From contig CATNEN010000034.1 in the NCBI GenBank assembly GCA_950097015.1, forward strand, positions 3,720,001-3,784,000: a DNA stretch of 64,000 nucleotides, written 5' to 3'. This document shows, piece by piece, positions 6,173-49,697 of this stretch (position 1 is its first letter; each line of letters opens with the position of its first letter). The DNA comes from Macrostomum hystrix (Eukaryota > Animalia > Platyhelminthes). Position numbers and translations under genes: made by a program. The notes beneath the pieces are model-generated. The model did not search any database. It was not told the DNA's origin and worked only from the letters and a program-made list of their open reading frames with translations.

Positions 6173-8947
6173 TGGAGTTTTAAAGATTCAAATCTCATCG
6201 ATTTACAAAACTTTCTGCGCGAATCACTGATTTGATTTTTCGTTGGTTTTAGATTCGATATTTATTAACCTGTCTTACTAATAACTAAAGCAAAGGCTTT
6301 TTTAACTGAACCAATGCACTTTTTTTAGCAAAATACGCAAAGATCTTGCCTCAAATGAGCCTTTGCTTCAGTCGTTATTGTGAGTTAATGCAATCATTAT
6401 GCCACATTTATTTTCAATTTTCTCTATTAAGAGTTTTCTATATAACAGAACCTGAATTTTTATCGCGTTAATTTTTTTGAAAAACAAATTTCTCTTCCTT
6501 AAATATAAGTTTAATGAAATTTCATAAACAGTTCATTAGCCGAGGATCCGTCACGTGCTTGGGGTTGCCTGAAAGCTTTCTAAAAATAGCAACAACTCAA
6601 CAGTGTCACGAGACCGTCGTGCTTACACATGTTTTTGTACTCGAGTTGTCTTAGAATTGTCCTAGAATTGGCCTAAGTTGTATTAAACGATTAAACACAG
6701 CTTGTTTGAACTTATCCGTAATTTTTAGTTCTTTTGCGATTTTTTGTTCTATTTATAGCTTTGTGCTCATGATTTGATTGGTGTTTAATTTATAATACTG
6801 CTATGTACTAGATCGTCATAATTGTTTTTGTTTGCCGTCTCTTTGTGCTCAGTTAAAGTTTCAATCTATATTGTATATACTCTAGACTTCAACATATTTA
6901 TTGTAGGATCCGTTCTCAGTAGTATCAGCTGTGTCATAAGTGCTTACTGGCCGAGTTTGTATTAATTTTTATTACGAATGGCAATTTTTTTAAATTTCTA
7001 CTGTTCATATTATATTACTTATAGTAAGAAGCCTGTTCTCCAGCTCTAAAAGTCTCTCCTTGTCAGTTAGTTTACATACTCCTATTAACCGGTGCCCGAA
7101 ATTAGGAGTGAAAAACCTGTGTTCTTATCGATCGTATCGTATTACTAGCTAGACAACATCTGGCATATCGTATTGTAAAACCATAGATTTTCCCTTTTAA
7201 ATATAATAAATACTACCCATCAAGAATTCGTTTTTCAGTTACTTTAATCTTTCGGTGTCGTAATCAAGTTTAATGAATATTATTTGTATATTTAAATAAT
7301 AATTTGAAATGCATGTCGTTATATGTTACCTTAAACCTCCCTGGCTTGCTGTATAAGAAAAGTTGACAGAATCAGAACCGTGGTATTGCACCTTGCGCCA
7401 TCATAGCAAGTTAAATGCAATATCGCTAAACACTGCGAGCGTACATCTTTGATTATCAAGCTAACTCCCAAAATCAATTGGTAATTTCATTTTACCCTTG
7501 CATGTACTGTACACATGTACATCACGCAATAAGGGCAGCGTTGGTTGTTATTGGCTTATGAAAATTGGCTTTTACGGCTACAGTTGATTTGCAATATGGG
7601 AGTAACGTGAACGAGAATAATAATTTTTTCATGCATTAAATCATAAACGAAGTATGACGCAGCTACCTTGGCAGGTCAAATATTTAAGGTCAAATAATAA
7701 GCTAAATTAAACAAATGTCTTTGTGGTGTTCGGCATGTCTTTAATAAGGTCCTTAACTTTTAAGTAAAGCCCCTTCTTCGGTATCCCCCAATTACATAGT
7801 ACTAGAGACGCTAGAACTGTTAATGTAACTGCTTATTACAATTACAGTTTAAGTTTTATAGAAATTTGATATTTAAACTAAGAAAATTTTAAAGCTAGTA
7901 CCTAACCTAAACAAATATATGTGAACACAGTTTTACATAGTTAAAGCCATGTTTTATCCGCAAAAAATATATATATTAGCTATGGATATCATCTGTAAAT
8001 CTTTTGCTTAATTGCTAAAAATCATTCTTTCGATTGTTATACTTTGTGTTTCTAGTTTCAACATATAAATTTAATATTACATTCCGAATTATATTTTTAA
8101 TACAAAGATTTGCTATTTTTTGGGACTTCATTATTATTGATAGAATTACCTCGTTTTTGTTTTTAGACATCAGGTCTTTCAGCAGCTCTTTGAAATGTAC
8201 TACGAAAAGTCGTCTATGTATTTTCACCAGTCTTTTTTTGTCGAAATGTAGAAATAAAAATTTCTGATTGTTTTTTTGTTATGCTATATTATTGTTTCTA
8301 GCTTAAGTTAAGTGGTTGAATAATAGGCCTAATGTTTGTTAGGTGGAAAAAGATTTTTATTTTTCATCTGAATTGCAGCTTAAATGCAGTCTGTATTACA
8401 TAGATGTTTCAATCCGAAGAGTGTTGCTTGAATATGTGGAAAATGTTTAATTATTTCATCAGCAATATTTCAGCAATTATTACTGCAGTATTACAGCAGT
8501 TTAAATACTAATTTTTAGGCAGAAAAATACTGCTGTTAAATTTGTAGATATCTTTAGATGAAATGTCTGACATAAAAATAACCAGACAGTAATAATAATA
8601 ATAGTAACAATTAATAATAATAATAAATCAAACAAAAGTCATTGGAGAAACTTATAGTTAGGCCCTACCTTTATTTAAATAGACAATAAGTGGACTCATG
8701 AATGGTAGATCATATTTTAAGGCAGAAAGATGTTGTATACATTTCAGTTAAAAGAATCAGCAATAAGGAGAAAGCTTTATCATTCAAAAATATATATATA
8801 GAAAGTTGAAATGCCGTTAGTAAATAATTTTTTTAACTTTGTAGCACGGTCAACTATTTTTTTACTGTCACACAGTAGGCCGCTTTATTATAGCTATCAT
8901 GCTTCAGCTGCCATTTTTTTATATTTCAGCCGCCACTGCAGCCAGCC

Positions 8948-9358
8948 ATGTTTGACGTTGCTACCCCTGATTCTGCCATGGTAACGGTGGCAACATCATC
9001 CGATCCCAACCATCGACCGGACTTTCTTCTGACAGAGAATCCTAAAGAGTTCTGGATGTCCACCGGCCTGTTCCCCCAGGAGTTTGTCATCAGCTTCAAC
9101 GCCCAGATGGAGATAAGCAGCATCAGCCTCTCGCACGTCAACATTCAACACATGGAAGTGTACATGTGCAAGGAGCAGGACGGTGAGACCTTCGAAAGTC
9201 TTTGTGAAGAGGATCTCGACCAGACTGAAGGCAGCTTCAATACGGCCAGCATTCCGCTAAAGAAGAAGGTCAGCGTCTGGCATCTGCGATTCCTTATTAC
9301 TTCGGCCACTGATCATTTTGTTGCAGTGCAGAAAGTGAAAGTTGACGGTCGGGCCTGA
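8948..9358 (+). CDS. IFT25: Intraflagellar transport protein 25 (HSPB11), single coding exon
   Basis: 136-aa ORF with ATSSDPNHRP...EFWMSTGLFPQEFVISF and LRFLITSATDHFVAVQKVKVDG, recognisable as the IFT25/HSPB11 fold. A strong U-rich acceptor (TTTTTTTATATTTCAG) ends at 8929, 18 nt upstream of the ATG. Confidence 0.88.
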   Translation: MFDVATPDSAMVTVATSSDPNHRPDFLLTENPKEFWMSTGLFPQEFVISFNAQMEISSISLSHVNIQHMEVYMCKEQDGETFESLCEEDLDQTEGSFNTASIPLKKKVSVWHLRFLITSATDHFVAVQKVKVDGRA

Positions 9359-39791: not shown

Positions 39792-42700
39792 TTATTCCGC
39801 CAATCCGAAGCGCTCTTTGAAGACTGCTAGCAGTGGCTCCAGACGGGCCTTCTCCTCGGCGTCCTCGCTGTGGGCCAAGTGCTCCTGTACAACGCCGTGA
39901 ACTGCGGCCACCGGACTAGATCGCATGTTGAACATCTGGCGAACCGGCCGAACAACGCCAGAGTCTGCTGAAGACATTGTGCACACTTGCAGAAGGATTA
40001 GGTCCACTAGCTGCAGAGTGAACAGGCCCATCTCTAGCCTGCGGGACGACAGAAATGTTATTTTTACATAATTTATCTTATTATGTGCTCTGACCTGCTC
40101 AGATGAGCTTAAATTACAGATTTTATGCTTAGATGTGCTCAAATTTTCGTCTGATCTACTTACGAGGGGTGTCCAAAAAGTAGTGATACTTTTGCTCGTA
40201 TAGCCTTACTGCATGCTTGAAAATCAGCAAGTTTGGTGTTGTTGGAAAGCGAAAAATATCAGCTTTAATTTGACTGCAAACATTTAACAAAAAGACAACC
40301 TATAACAAAGTTATGAATAGAAACACACAACAAGGTCAGCCATAGAGTTACAATGAATTTATGCATGGTGTAACAGGTCAAGAAGTTTCGACAGTTAGTA
40401 CGACTCATCATCATCAGGGAGGGAAGCTTTCTCCACATAATTACCCCCCGATTGCACGCACTTCTTCCAGCGACGAAACAAGCTTACAATCGCATCTGCG
40501 TAGATCTGTGGTGGGTCGGAACCCTTCAGTGTCCACACTTTAGACTCTTGCTTTGTCGGCGGGTCAAAATGTGGAACCCACGTCTCGTCGCCAGTAACAA
40601 TCAACTGGCGGAACTGATTCCAGCCACCGCGTTGACTTACCAGATTCAGGTTCCCTTGGCATGTCTGCTGGCGCTGCAGTCGCATATCAGCAGTGAGGAG
40701 CTTTGGGACCCAGCGGGCGCTCAGCTTAACGAAGTTCATATTGGTCAGGCATAGATGAACCGTTGATCGTGGGGTGTCGAGTCTGTCAGCAATCTCACGA
40801 ATTGTCATTCTGCAGTCTTCTTCCAGCAGATCAAGAATCCGGTCAGCCAAAGCCTTTGAGCTTGGTGTAGATGGCCTTCCTGGCCTTGGCAAGTCAGCCA
40901 AATTTGTTCTTCCTGACTCAAATTGCTCGACCCATCTGTACACCGTCATGCGACTTACTGCTTCGGCTCCGTGAATGCTGCACAGATGATGGTAAATCTC
41001 CTGTCCACTTTTCCCAATACTCCATAGTGTGTGAATTGCGTGTCGCTGTCCTTCCTTTGAGCGCACGTCCGTAACTGTCAGTTGAACAGAATCTGGTCTT
41101 GAAAAAGCAAGCACTTGTGAAAGAAAAATGAGCTGGCAGTGCAGAAGCAGGCAGGCAGGCAGAAGCAAGCTGGCAGTGCAAAGAAGACTTAGCCACAATT
41201 TTACCACAGACCAAAAAGCAACCCTCGTACGCTCGTAAAATGCTACCCCAGTATTTATTGGTTTACATTTATTGATTTGTTAAGCTCTAAAGCTTCATGA
41301 ATCTTTGAGGCAGATAAAAACTCAACAAAGTCAACCATACAGTATTTTTGTAAGTCTATGAGCAACCCTTGCTCAAATAGACAGTGATAACTTTTTTTAA
41401 AAACAACATATGAGGATGATTTTTTAGTCAAATTAAAGCTGATATTTTTCGCTTTCCAACAACACCAAACTTGCTGATTTTCAAGCATGCAGTAAGGCTA
41501 TACGAGCAAAAGTATCACTACTTTTTGGACACCCCTCGTAAGTTAAGTCCGACCTGCTCAGTCAGATGTACTCAAATTATAGTCTGACCAGCTCAGATAT
41601 TCTCAAATTATAGTCTCACATGCTCAGATATTCTTAAATTATAGTCTGACCTGCTCAAATGTGCCCGAATTTTAGACTGACCTGCTCAAATGTGCTCGAA
41701 TTTTAGACTGACCTGCTCAAATGTGCTCAAATTAAGGCTGAACTGCTCAGATTAGCTCAAATTCAGTCTGACCTGCTCAGATATGCTCAAATTATTGTAC
41801 CTAATTTTTTAAGCAATTTGAGACTCACCTCCTTAGATAAACTTCCTCTTCTAACTCCTCCTCAGTGGTGGCATTCCATAGCTCCGGCTGGCGTCTTTCA
41901 GCTAGGAGCTTCCTATCCGCGGACTTAACCAAATCGCGCCATTTAAAGTGCAGCTCAGCGAGTCGCTCAACTTTAGCGTGATCATTCTCAATGAATTTAG
42001 ACAGGACACGAGCTTTGTGAGTTGAAGATGTTGAGCAGTGACGCAAAAGGTTGTGCAATATTGAACACAGATGCTCTTCAATCTCTTGAATAGAGAAGCC
42101 GCTCTTCTTGGGCTTCGGCGGTCGCATGAAAACGGGAAATATGGTGCGCAGGCCGAGTATGTCCACAAACTTTAATGCATTCTCAGCGCCATCTGGCCCA
42201 TTCATGGCGTAGTCTAGAACCTGTGGAGTGTGCAATGGTGGTGGTGTCCTGTGGTTGAGCTTGAACGGTGAAATTTCATGAAATGAAATGAGTGTCAATA
42301 GTGACCTATTTTAACCTTTTGTAGCCCTTGAAGGTCCAGCAGTCCATCTAGATAAAGGTCGGTGACCACCGAAGACGGAGATTATGCAGACACATTTGGG
42401 TGACATGCTGATAAGTTTTAGAGGCCTGGCAAGGCCGCACTGAGGCGCAGTGCTTATTCGTGTATAGGGGTGTATGAAATACACCCCTTTTATGGGAAAA
42501 ATCTGACCTTCGACCAGAACCATTGAATATCTCGACGGTCTGAAGAGCTGGCGACTAGATTATTTTTTCAAAAGATGCGCAGCAAAAAGCTGGCCCTTGT
42601 TCTTGAGTTTAGTGTGCTTACCCGCTTGCGTTGCTCCGTTCGGGTGCAGCACAAAAGTTGTCAGGGAAATCCCCCCTTGGTAGTTCTACTGTTAAGGTAC

Positions 42701-44304
42701 ACCGTATAATACGAACACAACAATCATGCTATCAAAAAGTTTATAATGCTTCGCAGATAAGAATTAGATAACTACTAACCTTGAGAGCGGCGGGTCTAGC
42801 AACCCGCTTCTCGCGCAGAATCAGATTCATTAGCTGCAGTCCTTCGCCGCGCAGGAATCTCTCTTTATTAGCCTTGGCTAGCAAAGCGCTGCACAGACAA
42901 TTGAACAGATTCTCCATGAGTTCGCGCTCCTCAGAATCGGCCGGATCCTGGCGTTTGTAATGGAGTAGCTGGTTTAGCAGCACGTCAACACCTTTTAGCT
43001 CTCCTAGTAGCAGTCTGTTTGGCTCCGAGCTCTGCAATAGGATGGCTAGCAGTTCGCTGGCGTACAGCTTATTGGGACTGAAGCCGCGCTTGCCGATTCG
43101 CTTTAGTAGGCAGGCTAACAGGCCCTGTTTGGCCGCCATTTGTTCCAGACAGTCTGGCCGCGCCTCGCATAGGTTCTCTATGATGCCTGTAGATTGCATG
43201 GATGACAATTACATGGTTAATTACCCGTGGGGGAGTGAACTGGTCAATTACCCGCAGGAGAGTGAACAGGTTAATTTACCCGGAGAGAAGTGAACTGGTC
43301 AGTTACCCGCAGGGGAGTGAACTGGTTAATTACCCACAAGGGAGGTAAGTGGTAAAATTAATCGCGAAATGACCAGGTTTTTTTAACCTTGGAAGAATTA
43401 TCAATGCTAATTAACCGTGAAAAATCACAAGGCTAATTAACCGTATGCCTAATGAGCACTCTAATTCTTATTAATGATAACATTATCAGCAAATTGTGAC
43501 TACACTGGAGTCAGCGCAGGTAGCAAATAAGCAAGCTAAAACTACTTTGCAAAATCTATACAAGCGTCGCTAACCAAATGAGGAATGCACGCCGTCAGCC
43601 TCCTCCTTGATCGCCTCATCCAGCCTATCCAGATTCTGCACCAGCATCATCACCAGCTGAGCGTCCATCAGTCGGCCAACTAGCTGCTCGGTATCGTCCG
43701 GATTCTCAGCCAGCACATCCGTGTCTGTCATCTCTTCCAGCAGGTCAATGACAGCGATGGATATGTCCGTATTTTCGTGCAGCACCAGCTGCAGCAGGGT
43801 GTCCAGCACAGGCAGGTCGCACAGGGTCGGATAGGCAGCTGGCACAGTAGGCAGGGTGTGCAATTCCTGTAGAGCCGAATGCAGTTCCACTTCGGACTCC
43901 ATGAATTTCTCCGGGCAATCCGAGTATTTCACGCGCAGCTCGGCATTTCTAGACGCCCGCTTGTCTAGTTGAAGCATCAGCAGGCGCATTCCAGCCACGC
44001 TGTCGGCTTTCGAAGCGCCAGCCGATTCGCCAGAGTCGCCGTCATTGTCTTCGTCGTTGTCAGCCTCGAGGGCACGCAGAACGGCATCCTTATTGAGAAC
44101 AGCCGATGCCGGCAGCCTGATGGAAGACGACACCGGCGGTCGAGACGGTAGCGGAGTGCCAGTGATGCTAGCAGAGGTGGCGGCCGCGGCCACAGCCAGA
44201 CGGGCTCGCTTTCTCTCAACGTAGCCAGCGTCGGTGTTGTCAGAGAAGCGGGTGCGCCGTTGGCCGGGAGTGGCCGGCTTGTAGGCTAGAACCTCGGTGA
44301 TGTC
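39792..44304 (-). CDS. CTNNBL1: Beta-catenin-like protein 1 (Prp19/NTC spliceosome component), 4 exons; source of the initiator ATG unresolved
   Basis: Exons (descending): 43575-44304, 42780-43186, 41829-42220, 39792-40038, in frame. Motifs: DITEVLAYKP, NAELRVKYSDCPEKFMESEVEL, HENTDISIAVIDLLEEMTD, NKLYASELLAILLQ, EERELMENLFNCLCS, FLRGEGLQLMNLILREK, GLRTIFPVFM, FIENDHAKVERLAELH, YLRRLEMGLFTLQLVD. Confidence 0.95.
40163..41538 (-). mobile_element. Non-autonomous mariner with 113-bp perfect TIRs, inserted in CTNNBL1 intron 3
   Basis: TA TSD at 40161-40162 and 41539-41540. TIRs 40163-40275 and 41426-41538 are exact reverse complements by eye. ORF 40395-41207 has HTH motifs (TVYRWVEQFESG, DLPRPGRP), WVPKLL, IVTGDETWV, then jumps from KGSDPPQ to the C-terminal RRWKKCVQSGGNYVE, so the second and third catalytic Asp regions are deleted. 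Confidence 0.95.
41541..41800. repeat. Degenerate 31-bp tandem repeat (CTGACCTGCTCAAATGTGCTCGAATTTTAGA) in CTNNBL1 intron 3, continuing at about 40085-40160 on the other side of the mariner
   Basis: Related units flank both ends of the transposon, so the mariner inserted into a pre-existing array. Confidence 0.75.
43212..43345. repeat. Degenerate 27-bp tandem repeat (GTGAACTGGTCAATTACCCGCAGGAGA) in CTNNBL1 intron 1
   Basis: About 5 imperfect copies. Confidence 0.7.
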
Positions 44305-44829
44305 CTGCAATGTGTGTATTTTTAGCATTTTCACGTTAATTCTGTCGCACGGTACTAAAAGTAGTGCGAGTTATAAGCGGACTAAGGCTAATAAGTCATG
44401 AAAAAGGTCCGTTATGTAGGGGTGTAATGCTTGGTTTACAGGTTTGGCCTTTAAGCTGTCCTTATTCCTTAGGGTTGCCTAGCTTGGTCTAGTGCAGCCC
44501 AACCGCCCTCCGATTAAAATTGGTTCTCAGAAACAACAAGAATATTAGTTTACGATAGACAGTTCTTTCTCAAAACCAGAAGAAGGCAAAAAGCAATAGC
44601 TAGCATCCAAGTTATCATCATCCAAGAAATTGAGCAACTAATTGTATATTTATTACGAATTAAATTAAACAAGCTAGAATTTTACAAATCGACAAAAAAT
44701 TAAAACACTCACACATGCGAAAAATGCGTTTCGATAAAAAATATCAGGAAAAAGTTGAAACTGAGCATAATAAATAATCTAGCGAAAGCATTAGCTTGAA
44801 ATGCGGAACTGTCATGTACAATAAATAGA

Positions 44830-46876
44830 TTACTGACTATTAACCAGCGAGTTGCACTTTAGCAGGTAGTGCAGAGCGGACTCGCTCAGCTCAGTCAGGC
44901 CGACGCGACGATCGGCGTAGCGAACTAGAGAACGCCTTGAGTAGCCAACGAAAACGGCCACGCTGCGCATGAATGCGGCCCGGTCCAGAGCCTCGTCACG
45001 ACCGAACGGTCGACAGGCACGTCCCGGCGACTGGCGAAGATCACGAAGCAGACGGGTCAGAGCTGGCCGCGGCTCCAATGATGCAAACGACTGCGTAGAA
45101 GATTCTCCGTTGGACTCACCGCTGTTGCTAGGCAACAAAAGCAAACCTAGCATTAGACTTAGCCCAGCTGATGCTAAACGATCGGCAGCTTCGATGCAGC
45201 GTCGGCGTCGACGTCGGAGTCGATCGGCTAAGACGACAACGTCAGCCGTGCGAGAAATTGCTTTGAGTTGGAAGGCGCCTGCGGCAGCTCCGGCCAGCAG
45301 AGCGGCATCGATTGGCGCCGGCGTCACAGCGATCGACAGTCGGCAATTGACGTCGCCGTCGCGGAGACCAAGCAGCAACCAGTGCAGAGTATTCAACAAC
45401 TGGCCGATGTCACCGCGGCATGCGTCGACAAGAGCGACGGCCGCATCAGCTGTGAGCAGCCGACCAAGGCCCAGGCAGAGGACGCGGGCGTAGGCGGCCA
45501 CGAGAGGCCTGGTTGGCCGGCGGAGACGAAAAATTGGTGCGGCAGCATCGGCGGCGGACAGGCAGCGGACGCCGCGGCGAAACAACTCGGCATCGGCGGC
45601 TGCCAGCAGTACAGGCTTCCGGCTGACGGCACAGACGTCGGCAATTAGACGCCGCAGATTCGGCTCATCGTCGTGTGGGTTGTCAACATCGTCTAGCAGG
45701 ATTAGCCAGGCACCGCTTACTGACAGCTGTGGAACGGCAAGAGTCTTTTTAGCCTTTGTCCCCTGCATATGATAACAGATTGTCATAGAAAAACAAGCCT
45801 GTGATTCTCACATCAGCCACATCAAGTGTATCCGTCGCTTCATCCTCCGCCACAGACGGGCTTCGCCTGTCTTTCGCTTCCTTCTCCTTGCTCTCTGATG
45901 ATTCGCGGCGTCGTTTCCGCTGTACAACCTGGCAGCAGGTAGCGGCCAGTTGCAGCCGCTGTGCTAGCTGAGGCCCGTGACGCCGCTCCTCGGCTCCAAT
46001 CTCCAGCACGCGCAAGCCGGACTGGCGAGCTATTGCGCGCGCAACGCAACTCCGGCCGGGGCCTTCAATTAGCGCCATTCGACGGCCAACAGCGTTAGCC
46101 GACGCTGTCGACATCCAATCGGCCAGCTTTCGAACAGCCTCTGCGTTGCCAAGAACGCCAGAGGCGGAGCGCGGCGCGAGTAGGTCATTGAGAGCGCGTG
46201 TTTTGAACAGGCCATCCTTTTTATTAATAGAGCAATTTAAATTAGCGCGCAACTCTGTCAGATAACGACCAGCTGGCAGGCCGGGCTGCCAGGCGCGCAG
46301 TATTGTTAACTCGTCGCGAATAACGGCTGCTGCTTCAATCTCATCGGTAGGCAGGCTGTCAAGGCGAAATCGTAGCGTGGTAGCCGAGGCATCCACTGAC
46401 ACTGGCAATGCTTCGCTGTAATCATACAGCCCAGTGTCTAAATCGATCTTATCAGGCTTGTCAGATGAAAATTCGGCAGAGTCCAGCCTCATCGACTGTT
46501 TAGGAGCCAGCCAGCCAATGTGTTGACACCAGCCAGCTGGGAAAGGCCAACTACAAGAAACATAAGATTGAGAGGCCGCACCAGTGGCTCTAGTGAACTG
46601 TGGCCGAAAATCTGCATCCAGAAATGCTCGCCGACGAACTAGAGCGTCGGCGGGTAGCTGCCGACGACTGCTGAAGCTCGGCTGACTAAGCGAGTCAAGC
46701 CATTCAAATGAGCCGCCAGGCGATGACGACGGCGCATTTAAATCTATCTCTATAAGCCCGCACGGCGCGTCAGGTGCCGAGGTGACACGCGTCAAATATT
46801 TGACAATGCCACCGCTCTGTGACGAATTTTTTACTGCAGCTAAACGTTGCCGCCGTCGACGCTGTGGCTGCTGCAT
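44830..46876 (-). CDS. ATAD5: ATAD5/ELG1-like RFC large subunit (PCNA unloader), 2 exons, about 665 aa
   Basis: Exons 45812-46876 and 44830-45762, separated by a 49-nt GT-AG intron. AAA+ RFC-like blocks: LLAPRSASGVLGNAEAVRKLADWM, LIEGPGRS (degenerate Walker A), GLRVLEIGAEERRHG...AATCCQV, LILLDDVD (Walker B), SRKPVLLAA, CRGDIGQLLNTLHW. The block order matches ATAD5 from recalled family sequences; orthology was not tested. Confidence 0.7.
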
Positions 46877-49697
46877 GCCAGCTGTAGACAAGAAGTAACC
46901 TGTATAGTTCATTCTATTTGGTCTATATTATAGAAATGACACTACCTTGAAAAGGTACACAAAAGGGAGCTTGTAGTTCAGTGGCTAGAGCTTAGAATTT
47001 CTAACTGAGTGGCTTATGTCACTTAAACCCTCCATACTGTGATGTCTCAAATCTTTAGAAACACCTTTATACACAAGTGATGTATATTGTATTTGCCTAC
47101 TTTGATCAGTCAGAATTTTATAATACCATAATATAAAGCTAATTTTCAACAATTTGAGGTGTCCAGAAACATTTTTATTAATGTAGCTCTTAATTCTGTA
47201 GCAGCTAGCCATTTTAGCACGACTAGGCTCCATGAAACTAAATTATCTACTGCCAAACAGCAGTTCCTTCTTTGGGAATGAAAAGGTGCAGTTTTGCAGA
47301 ACCAGAATCTCTAGAACCTGATGCAACAGCACCAAGGAATCATATGGTCAGTGATAGTCTTACAGTGGCAGTGACAATTAACCCCCCAGAAGGACTGAGA
47401 ACTCGAGACTTTGAAACTTTTTTTAATCCTCAATCAACTTTACCTACAATCATTACAGGTTATTAAATTGGATCTAAGTTGTTGTCCCTGATATTGATTT
47501 TTGTTAAGTGGCTAGGGCCTTTCTACCACAGAAATTTAATGTGGTAATGGACTAGCCAGTTGTTACAAGACTTAAAACTCAGTGGAGAACCTCTGAGTGC
47601 AATGGCAAGGTGGCTCTATGCTAGCAACAAGCAGCAAAAGTAGCTGGCAGAGTTAGAAGCTGCCATTGTTTCATGCTGGTTGACCTTCACAGCTACTGAA
47701 TATTGTTATCCAAAGATTTAGGGCACCCAAAAATATACCATTCAATCAGCATATTTTCATAAGCAAACATTTTCCTATTTTTAGCATTAAAAGTAATCTA
47801 GCAAGGTTATACTTTAAAATCTATATTTAAGTTAACTTCATTGTTAAGTAGTCTAGTAGTAATTAACTTTTGAGTATGTTGGAGTAGTTTTGAGATAGAG
47901 TGTAGCTATTTATGTTGATATCTAAATAATAAGGTCTAGGTCTCTTATTTATTAGGGGCCTATTCCCCTATTATATGAAATGTAATTTTTTATCTATTCT
48001 ATAATCAAAGCTACCTGTTACAAAATTGACTTGGTCTAACACTTTATATAATTAAAATAATAATTATGATTGGTATCTGTTAAAAAAAATTATGTTGGGC
48101 TAGAAATAGGCCTATCTTCAGATCTTAAAAGTAGGCAAAAAATAAGCCTATTTAGACTAAGCCACCATTACTCCAAATTATTTGCATATCTCCCAATGGA
48201 ATAAATGCTGATGCCTGTCAAACAAAATACCTTTCTTGACATTTTTGGTTTTGTATAGCAATTTTGTATTACTGTCTTTTTTCAAGATAGGCCCTAGTAT
48301 TAAATGTTTAAATGATAAATTTTTACAATGCCAATCAACTTGTATTTATCTAGAAATAAGGCACGACACATGTGTAAGTAATTTATTTTGTATAGGTAAG
48401 ATTGATTATTAAAATAACCTGACCTTATACCATATTAGGTTTAATTTAAATATTGTAAAGACATGAAAATCACACCTTGATAAATGCTGCCAATCATTGT
48501 GCAGTGCCTTAAAGCAATTAACAAGTTTATTTATTATCAGCTATGTGCATCTACTATAAAGCCTAAAGGCTTACCACCTTAATCAATTTATGTAAACAAT
48601 TAAATTGTTAACTTTCCACATCATTTTATCAAGTTAGCTGTAAATGTTAGTAAATGTAGCATTTAGGTGCAACATTTTTTGAGAATATAGGCCTAGGCTA
48701 ACTAACAATAGTTACAATAGAAATTGAGCAGTATTTATAGTTTTTTGTTTGTTAATTAACATAACTAAAATGTTATTAGGCCTACTATTAAATACTAGAT
48801 CTATTGATGATAAAATAAATATGTTAGCAAGTCACAGAACAGAGGTCGTATGGCATGCTCTAGCTTTAGCTTAGTTATAGCTCATTATTGAAATATAAAT
48901 TCTTAACTGTGACACAAGTCAAGGAGAGCATTATAGCATGGGCATGGTCATAGATTGCTAAGGCCAAGCAAAAAATGATTTTGCTAACTTAGTAGGCCTA
49001 AATTCCAATTAAATAATAAAAGTAAACAGTCACAAAACAGGCCCTAACCTAAGCATAAAGCTGTCATTTGTTTATATTATTAGTGTAATATTATTATCTT
49101 CATGCTAAAATATATAATAAAATAATAACCCAAAACACAAGTAAAATCTGTGTTAGGTAAATTTTATGGCTTGCAATTGCTCAACTAGGCCTAATACTAA
49201 GTATATAGGAAAAAATAGTTGACTTTAAATGTAACATTAATGCTAATGATCGAGAGATTCGAGACTGGATTTCACAGGCTTTAGGTAGCTATGTACCTAT
49301 TAGTTTTACTTTAGGCCTAATACAATAGTACATATATACGGTGCCTGTCTATATGTAGGCAGGCATATATTGAACAGAGTTTGCACAGACACGTCGTATT
49401 ATATTTCTCGCGTAGATTTAACAAAATGTTGATTGCTTCTGGTTTCAGACTAGACTCTGTACATACAATACAAGCTAGCGCACATTAAATTCGTAAACTC
49501 GTGAGACAATTCACTGCGGCAGTAATGATGACATGACTTGAGATAAAGAGCTTTCGAAATATGAAAGTAAATTAAATTAAATAAATAAAAAAATATTTAT
49601 TTTAACAAAGAGACGAGATTTGAAAATTCGTTTTACTTTACTTACTGCTTAGCAGTCCTGACGACTGAATAGTTCAGATTGTCAGGCATGATTGATA

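What the first reader, a model, noticed from the sequence alone, without database searches (positions are those of the whole stretch)
44290..44830. CTNNBL1 initiator Met appears to be missing from the genome: candidate start codon donated by a trans-spliced leader
Seen: the first exon begins at an acceptor (CATTGCAG|GAC ATC ACC GAG GTT CTA GCC TAC AAG CCG) encoding DITEVLAYKP. Established: the vertebrate CTNNBL1 N-terminus is MDVGELLSYQP, so the AG falls exactly between the conserved Met and Asp. Seen: the 525 nt up to the ATAD5-like stop contain no ATG|GT mini-exon (no ACCAT on the + strand). Established: flatworm spliced leaders end in AUG, which can act as the initiator. Inference: the SL supplies the start codon in frame. 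Alternative: an unspliced in-frame ATG at 44328 gives the extension MLKIHTLQ. The IFT25 acceptor (8929, 18 nt before its ATG) would also be in frame with an SL AUG.
Basis: partly seen in the sequence, partly recalled or inferred. Interest (0 to 1): 0.75.

Follow-up and report, generated by a model that had tools for sequence, protein, structure and literature searches.

The report
Start codon supplied by spliced leader
This flatworm's CTNNBL1 gene has no start codon of its own: RNA assemblies show the trans-spliced leader, which ends in AUG, joined directly in front of the first codon, a mechanism already known in flatworms.

Summary
The observation and the reading both hold. CTNNBL1 lies on the minus strand and has four exons. 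Its first exon starts at TTGCAG|GAC (GAC = 44304-44302).

- **Trans-splicing shown.** In three public runs of one study, intron-free contigs match the window with no mismatches. At 44305 each carries 22 foreign letters. With the ambiguous G, these equal the last 23 nt of the published 35-nt Macrostomum lignano leader, which ends ...TTATTGCATG (PMC8629364). The mature mRNA therefore reads AUG GAC AUC ACC = M-D-I-T-E-V-L-A-Y-K-P. Bilaterian orthologues start M-D-V/I-G-E-L-L-x-Y/F-Q/K-P.
- **Conserved in M. lignano.** Its orthologue has the same TTGCAG|GACATCACC junction. NCBI annotates it as "partial", starting at D. It has no in-frame ATG in the outron.
- **Coding constraint starts at GAC.** Over codons 1-42, dN is 0.022 and dS is 0.78. 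Upstream, only TTGCAG is conserved.
- **Rival starts are weak.** ATG 44328 is not conserved and no contig covers it. The first in-frame genomic ATG is codon 106, behind two out-of-frame ATGs.

Trans-splicing is shown; use of the leader AUG in translation is inferred. The mechanism is known from Schistosoma (Cheng et al. 2006). The scan found other such genes in this genome. This is a solid new example, not a new kind.

The parts
44305..44310 (-). SL trans-splice acceptor TTGCAG (AG = 44306-44305)
   Evidence: Three contigs leave the genome here and carry leader sequence. It fits the [T/C]TNCAG motif reported at M. lignano SL acceptors (PMC8629364). It is 6/6 identical in M. lignano, while the flanking outron is not conserved.
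43575..44304 (-). CTNNBL1 exon 1 (730 nt), first codon GAC = Asp2 of the protein, no ATG of its own before codon 106
   Evidence: Contigs cover 44305..43574 with 0 mismatches. Pfam PF08216 E 5e-48. ATG map. dN/dS about 0.03 over codons 1-42 against M. lignano.
42780..43186 (-). CTNNBL1 exon 2
   Evidence: Contig joint skips 43187-43574, GT..AG on the minus strand. Pfam PF08216 E 1e-49.
41829..42220 (-). CTNNBL1 exon 3
   Evidence: Contig joint skips 42221-42779, GT..AG on the minus strand. The GTGAGT donor starts at 41828.
39792..40038 (-). CTNNBL1 exon 4 coding part, with stop TAA at 39794-39792. The intron before it holds a mariner-type element.
   Evidence: tblastn of M. lignano P0093 residues 517-599 gives 90% identity at 40043-39795. 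Acceptor ccgcag|G seen. The contigs have about 316-353 further letters that lie outside the stretch laid.
44326..44328 (-). In-frame ATG inside the outron (rival start, MLKIHTLQ extension)
   Evidence: Present. It is removed by trans-splicing. No contig covers it. It is absent from M. lignano.
44311..44707 (-). Outron / intercistronic spacer between the upstream gene's transcript end and the acceptor
   Evidence: Depth is 0 in bins 44324-44701 in all four runs. It does not align with M. lignano. It contains eight out-of-frame ATGs.
44708..44832 (-). Stop codon (44832-44830) and 3' UTR of the upstream same-strand gene (weakly RFC/ATAD5/Ctf18-like)
   Evidence: ORF ends at 44830. Contigs of that gene end at 44708, 44729 and 44800.

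Best explanation
The CTNNBL1 orthologue of this Macrostomum-type flatworm has no genomic initiator codon. Its pre-mRNA carries a 3' splice site (TTGCAG, 44310-44305) with no cis donor upstream. That pre-mRNA comes either from its own promoter or from a polycistronic transcript shared with the same-strand gene about 400-525 nt upstream.

The spliceosome joins the 35-nt spliced leader, which ends in AUG, to GAC at 44304 and discards the outron. The mature mRNA has a 32-nt 5' UTR made only of leader. Its first AUG is the last three leader nucleotides, in frame with the ORF, which gives Met1-Asp2-Ile3-Thr4. This recreates the conserved metazoan CTNNBL1 N-terminus (MDVGELLSYQP type).

Shown: the leader-exon joint, its frame, the lack of any other usable AUG, and conservation of the arrangement in M. 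lignano. Inferred: that translation starts at the leader AUG.
For: -: contigs of 1869, 1906 and 1884 nt from runs X2, X3 and X4 align with 0 mismatches to 44305..43574, 43185..42777 and 42217..41828. Three GT..AG introns are removed, so the contigs derive from RNA.
- each contig has 22 unaligned letters beyond 44305. In sense orientation these read GCGAAGACTCAATTTATTGCAT. Together with G 44305 they are identical to nt 13-35 of the M. lignano leader CGGTCTCTTACTGCGAAGACTCAATTTATTGCATG (PMC8629364).
- the leader is not encoded in the window.
- in exon 1 the first ATGs are out of frame (positions 218 and 260, with 36- and 22-codon ORFs). The first in-frame ATG is codon 106.
- orthologues start M-D-[VI]-G-E-L-L, and Macrostomum aligns from the D.
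- M. lignano BOX15_Mlig001294g5 is annotated 'partial' and starts DITEVLSYKP. Its locus has catTTGCAG|GACATCACCGAGG, an in-frame TAA 99 nt upstream, and no ATG between the two. UniProt A0A1I8G9T2 also starts DITEV.
- over codons 1-42, dN is 0.022 and dS is 0.78, with differences by codon position of 3/0/16. Upstream identity is 6/6 for TTGCAG, then 4/24, 9/30 and 7/40.
- Literature: the flatworm leader AUG acts as initiator in Schistosoma (Cheng et al. 2006, cited in PMC9851317). PMC10468722 notes that the Macrostomum SL's final ATG is a start codon.
Against: - There is no protein-level or ribosome-profiling evidence.
- The leader AUG has U at -3, a weak context, although this gene gives it G at +4.
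- If the upstream gene is trans-spliced at 46882 as its contigs suggest, the leader AUG there would be out of frame with that gene's ATG. In that case the leader AUG cannot be used by every ribosome.
- All three supporting runs come from one study and are assemblies. Rare unspliced or alternatively started transcripts would not show.
- The runs are not recorded as RNA. That status is inferred from the removed introns.
Confidence: 0.9

Rival explanations
1. The protein starts at the genomic in-frame ATG at 44328 on non-trans-spliced transcripts. This would give an 8-residue extension (MLKIHTLQ) before DITEV.
For: The ATG exists, is in frame and has no stop before GAC. Contigs cannot prove that rare unspliced mRNAs are absent (caveat).
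Against: - No contig covers 44324-44701 in any run, while all three transcript contigs carry the leader.
- In M. lignano the outron has no in-frame ATG after an in-frame TAA.
- Sequence identity collapses immediately upstream of TTGCAG.
- No orthologue has such an extension.
- An in-frame ATG within 8 AT-rich codons is an unremarkable chance event.
Confidence: 0.04
2. The leader AUG is skipped and translation starts at the first in-frame genomic ATG (codon 106, MRLLMLQ). This would give a protein lacking the N-terminal 105 residues.
For: The leader AUG context is weak at -3. Leaky scanning past the leader AUG must occur in genes where it is out of frame, which is probably the case for the upstream gene.
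Against: - Two out-of-frame ATGs precede codon 106.
- Codons 1-42 are under strong purifying selection in this exact frame: dN/dS about 0.03, with 16 of 19 differences at third positions. They must therefore be translated.
- The N-terminal motif is conserved across Bilateria.
Confidence: 0.04
3. The leader-exon joint is an assembly or library artefact, and the true 5' end lies elsewhere.
For: The evidence consists of Logan contigs, not raw reads. All come from one study. Only 22-23 nt of leader are retained.
Against: - The same joint appears in three separately assembled runs.
- It falls exactly at a consensus acceptor AG.
- Every 31-mer across the joint must have been read for the contig to exist.
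- The independent M. lignano annotation, built from SL-trimmed transcripts, starts at the homologous base.
Confidence: 0.02

Closest known systems
[quoted passage not shown]
   Same: The leader ends in AUG and is joined in frame to an ORF that has no AUG of its own in the mature mRNA. The leader supplies Met1.
   Different: That work was done in Schistosoma mansoni with cDNAs and translation assays. Here the host is a free-living macrostomid, the gene is CTNNBL1, and translation itself was not tested. The junction also reproduces the ancestral Met1|Asp2 boundary to the nucleotide and is kept in two Macrostomum species.
Macrostomum lignano SL trans-splicing and operons (Ustyantsev & Berezikov 2021, PMC8629364; Wiberg et al. 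2023, PMC10468722)
   Same: The last 23 nt of the leader are identical. The acceptor fits [T/C]TNCAG. A conserved housekeeping-type gene is trans-spliced. The same-strand neighbour lies under 1 kb away, which fits their operon criterion.
   Different: In the text I read, those papers do not analyse genes that depend on the leader AUG. Wiberg et al. only remark that the final ATG is probably a start codon. The window comes from a different species or lineage than M. lignano: 80-94% amino-acid identity per exon and dS about 0.8 over the first 42 codons.
M. lignano gene BOX15_Mlig001294g5 (NCBI, 'partial') / UniProt A0A1I8G9T2
   Same: It is the orthologue, with the same four-exon layout, the same TTGCAG|GACATCACC start and the same upstream neighbour.
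   Different: It is annotated as a 5'-partial protein without Met. A third model (A0A1I8FAJ8) has a predicted N-terminal extension, MPRASTGVPL, that does not look real. The databases therefore record the symptom but not the explanation.

Membership tests
SL-donated initiator AUG (flatworm slORF) | The organism trans-splices a leader whose last three nucleotides are AUG | tested here: met
   The contig ends carry GCGAAGACTCAATTTATTGCAT plus G, equal to nt 13-35 of the published leader.
SL-donated initiator AUG (flatworm slORF) | The leader is joined to this gene's first exon at a 3' splice site, and the leader is not encoded nearby in cis | tested here: met
   The joint is at AG 44306-44305 in three runs. 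The leader has 0 matches in the window at up to 3 mismatches.
SL-donated initiator AUG (flatworm slORF) | The leader AUG is in frame with the conserved ORF, with no stop between | tested here: met
   AUG|GAC ATC ACC: the AUG directly abuts codon 2.
SL-donated initiator AUG (flatworm slORF) | The mature mRNA has no other AUG that could give the conserved N-terminus | tested here: met
   The first exon-1 ATGs are out of frame, and the first in-frame one is codon 106. Codons 1-42 are under coding constraint.
SL-donated initiator AUG (flatworm slORF) | Translation actually initiates at the leader AUG | not testable with these tools
   This needs ribosome profiling, N-terminal proteomics or a reporter assay.
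CTNNBL1 (beta-catenin-like protein 1, Pfam PF08216) | Significant match to the family profile along the protein, and to the solved human protein | tested here: met
   PF08216 E 5e-48, 1e-49 and 1e-33 for exons 1-3, in consecutive profile positions 17-426. Human CTNNBL1 chains E 1e-39.
Flatworm operon (polycistronic unit resolved by SL trans-splicing) | Adjacent same-strand genes under 1 kb apart with the downstream gene SL trans-spliced (criterion of PMC8629364) | tested here: met
   The upstream stop at 44830 and its transcript end near 44708 lie 404-525 nt from the acceptor at 44305.
Flatworm operon (polycistronic unit resolved by SL trans-splicing) | A polycistronic precursor spanning both genes exists | tested here: inconclusive
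   No contig bridges 44324-44701. Contigs drop rare precursors, so this proves nothing either way.

The most novel reading that the evidence does not exclude
The ancestral ATG of CTNNBL1 was itself converted into the acceptor. CAG now occupies the Met codon position, so the protein can be made only from trans-spliced mRNA. Because CTNNBL1 is itself a spliceosome-associated protein, this would make its synthesis a read-out of splicing capacity, that is, a feedback loop. More broadly, start-codon loss to the leader may be a frequent, selectable way in Macrostomum to keep polycistronic or unprocessed RNA untranslatable. The scan has now noted several further candidate cases in this genome.
Probability: 0.08. 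Interest if true: 0.55.

Novelty: new member of a known kind. Interest (0 to 1): 0.3.

Why it matters
- **Annotation.** This is a clean, nucleotide-exact example of a gene that cannot be annotated correctly from the genome alone. Public M. lignano models for the gene are either 'partial' without Met or carry an invented N-terminal extension. Pipelines for Macrostomum and other flatworms should add the leader AUG at in-frame trans-splice sites.
- **Evolution.** Dependence on the leader AUG is stable over a divergence of dS about 0.8, measured over the first 42 codons.
- **Not new in kind.** The mechanism was demonstrated in Schistosoma in 2006 and has been remarked on for Macrostomum, so a specialist would not be surprised.

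Tried and rejected
- **Rfam.** A scan of the whole window found no family, so no SL RNA gene is here.
- **Protein word search with exon 1.** It returned only fragments and distant orthologues. These were useful for N-termini, but the species' own full-length protein was not among them.
- **Search with the M. lignano model P0011.** It was swamped by low-complexity words and gave 3 hits. P0011 itself has no contig on record.
- **Search with P0093.** Among the best 120 hits listed, the only flatworm was M. lignano. I therefore could not ask whether planarians or parasitic flatworms keep their own ATG.
- **Full-length protein.** Exons were handled by reference one at a time.
- The loose letters at 46882 were not printed.
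- **Large representative search, structure prediction.** Not used, because the protein's identity was never in doubt.
- **Cis-spliced upstream ATG mini-exon.** Considered and rejected. There is no ATGGT or ATGGC in the 525 nt. The foreign letters are the leader. The upstream space is occupied by another gene's 3' end.
Full report
**What is there.** The feature lies on the minus strand. It reads ...cacacaTTGCAG|GAC ATC ACC GAG GTT CTA GCC TAC AAG CCG, with AG at 44306-44305 and GAC at 44304-44302. The open frame runs on to a GT donor at 43574.

- Exons 1-3 hit Pfam CTNNBL (PF08216) in consecutive profile positions 17-426, at E 5e-48, 1e-49 and 1e-33.
- Exon 1 matches human CTNNBL1 chains in the PDB at E 1e-39.
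- The 525 nt between this acceptor and the stop codon of the upstream same-strand gene (44832-44830) contain no ATGGT or ATGGC.
- The only in-frame ATG in that stretch is at 44328. It would give MLKIHTLQ before DITEV. An in-frame TAA lies at 44373.

**The decisive test.** The look-up of sequencing runs listed four runs of one 2020 study that hold 85-87% of the sampled words of 43570-44420. That share is about what exon 1 alone contributes. I laid three of them, plus a fourth run from another organism, on 41300-46950.

- The three gave contigs of 1869, 1906 and 1884 nt. These align without a single mismatch to 44305..43574, 43185..42777 and 42217..41828.
- The skipped pieces have CT..AC ends on the plus strand, which is GT..AG on the sense strand. 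The runs are not labelled as RNA, but contigs with introns removed must derive from spliced RNA.
- At 44305 every contig leaves the genome with 22 further letters, ATGCAATAAATTGAGTCTTCGC on the plus strand. In sense orientation this is GCGAAGACTCAATTTATTGCAT.
- Adding G 44305, which fits both the genomic AG and the leader, gives exactly the last 23 nt of the 35-nt M. lignano spliced leader CGGTCTCTTACTGCGAAGACTCAATTTATTGCATG (PMC8629364).
- The leader is not in the 64-kb window at up to three mismatches, so it arrives in trans.
- Depth is zero in the bins covering 44324-44701 in all four runs.

The mature mRNA thus reads ...UUAUUGCAUG|GACAUCACC. The leader's terminal AUG is in frame and directly abuts the Asp codon.

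**Is the leader AUG needed?**

- In exon 1 the first two ATGs (positions 218 and 260) are out of frame and open 36- and 22-codon ORFs. The first in-frame ATG is codon 106.
- Orthologues from nemerteans, molluscs, an annelid, a brachiopod, a bryozoan, arthropods, an echinoderm, a hemichordate and a lungfish start M-D-[VI]-G-E-L-L-x-[YF]-[QK]-P. The Macrostomum sequences align from the D, one column after the Met (alignment A1).
- The junction therefore recreates the ancestral Met1|Asp2 boundary to the nucleotide.

**Conservation in a second species.** The window is not M. lignano itself. Its orthologue is 80-94% identical per exon.

- NCBI lists the M. lignano protein BOX15_Mlig001294g5 as 'partial'. 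It begins DITEVLSYKPATPGQRR with no Met. UniProt A0A1I8G9T2 begins the same way.
- A third model, A0A1I8FAJ8, has a predicted MPRASTGVPL extension in front of DITEV. That extension looks like a gene-finder's attempt to supply a start.
- The genomic locus (L001, NIVC01000768.1) reads ...cccttacatTTGCAG|GACATCACCGAGGTTCT. It has the same upstream neighbour. An in-frame TAA lies 99 nt upstream, with no in-frame ATG after it. The rival start at 44328 thus has no counterpart there.
- Over the first 42 codons, window versus M. lignano gives dN 0.022 and dS 0.78. The 19 differences are distributed 3/0/16 over codon positions.
- Upstream of the exon, identity is 6/6 for TTGCAG and then 4/24, 9/30 and 7/40, which is chance level.

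Coding constraint therefore begins exactly at the acceptor. The N-terminal 105 residues are translated, and in the mature mRNA only the leader AUG can start them.

**Mechanism.**

- Shown: a 3' splice site matching the [T/C]TNCAG motif reported for M. lignano SL acceptors, no cis donor upstream, and the leader joined at 44304.
- Inferred: the 32 leader nucleotides before the AUG form the whole 5' UTR, and the AUG is Met1 of a protein of about 592 residues.
- The four exons are 44304-43575, 43186-42780, 42220-41829 and 40038-39795, with the stop at 39794-39792.
- The upstream gene's contigs end at 44708-44800. The intercistronic distance is therefore about 400-525 nt, which meets the under-1-kb operon criterion of PMC8629364. 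No precursor spanning both genes was seen, and contigs could not be expected to show one.

**Comparison with what is known.**

- The use of the flatworm leader's 3' AUG as initiator was demonstrated in Schistosoma mansoni (Cheng et al. 2006). As summarised in PMC9851317, that AUG is in frame in 28% of trans-spliced transcripts, and more than 40 cDNAs need it.
- All reported flatworm leaders end in AUG (PMC12582326).
- Wiberg et al. 2023 remark that the Macrostomum leader's final ATG is probably a start codon (PMC10468722).
- I found no paper that analyses leader-AUG-dependent genes in Macrostomum.
- This scan has noted other such genes in the same genome: a mitochondrial TyrRS, a thimet-type peptidase, a TPMT-like gene and MED20. 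I did not test those notes.

This is therefore a well-supported new example of a known mechanism, not a new kind.

**Caveats.**

- All supporting runs come from one study and are assemblies, so rare unspliced forms would be invisible.
- No protein-level evidence exists.
- The leader AUG has a weak -3 base.
- The neighbouring upstream gene appears to be trans-spliced at ctacAG (46883-46882). There the leader AUG would be out of frame with that gene's ATG at 46876 and would open a 14-codon overlapping ORF. If so, initiation at the leader AUG is not all-or-none.

Noticed in passing
window 46874-46912 (minus strand): Contigs of the upstream gene stop aligning at 46882, the G of tctacAG (an acceptor fitting [T/C]TNCAG), with 20 unaligned letters that were not printed. 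If these are the leader, its AUG is followed by CTGGC and then the gene's ATG at 46876. It would be out of frame and open a 14-codon overlapping uORF. That would make both genes SL trans-spliced, and it implies leaky scanning past the leader AUG.
   Followed up: partly
window 8923-8950 (plus strand): IFT25-like gene: tttcag ends at 8929, then CCGCCACTGCAGCCAGCC (18 nt, no stop), then ATG at 8948. A leader AUG joined at 8930 would be in frame and add MPPLQPA. A second possible acceptor, ctgcag ending at 8941, would also be in frame.
   Followed up: partly
window 40395-41207 (minus strand): An ORF of 270 aa that looks like a mariner/SETMAR-type transposase sits inside the last CTNNBL1 intron (41828-40039), on the same strand as the gene. 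It was not tested against any family library.
   Followed up: no
window 42245-42811: CTNNBL1 intron 2 holds a highly repeated element. Summed contig depth there is 100-890 against about 30 for the exons. There are many variant contigs, indels and loose ends in all three runs, which suggests an expressed or abundant repeat family.
   Followed up: no
window 44830-46912 (minus strand); L001 1-2338: The upstream gene has one 85-nt intron (45727-45811, GT..AG), no Pfam hit, and only faint PDB similarity to the AAA+ region of Ctf18 and ATAD5 (E 0.05-0.9). Where a Walker A loop would be expected the sequence reads GPGRSCVA, which by eye appears to lack the usual lysine. The gene is conserved as CTNNBL1's neighbour in M. 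lignano.
   Followed up: partly
L001 2590-2870: The M. lignano intergenic spacer upstream of CTNNBL1 carries a tandem array of units of roughly 40 nt (cagcctcccagatcctcagttgctg...) that is absent from the window's spacer.
   Followed up: no
P0011 (UniProt A0A1I8FAJ8): A third M. lignano CTNNBL1 model has a predicted N-terminal extension, MPRASTGVPL, and stretches that look frame-shifted. It is probably an annotation or assembly artefact caused by the missing genomic ATG.
   Followed up: partly
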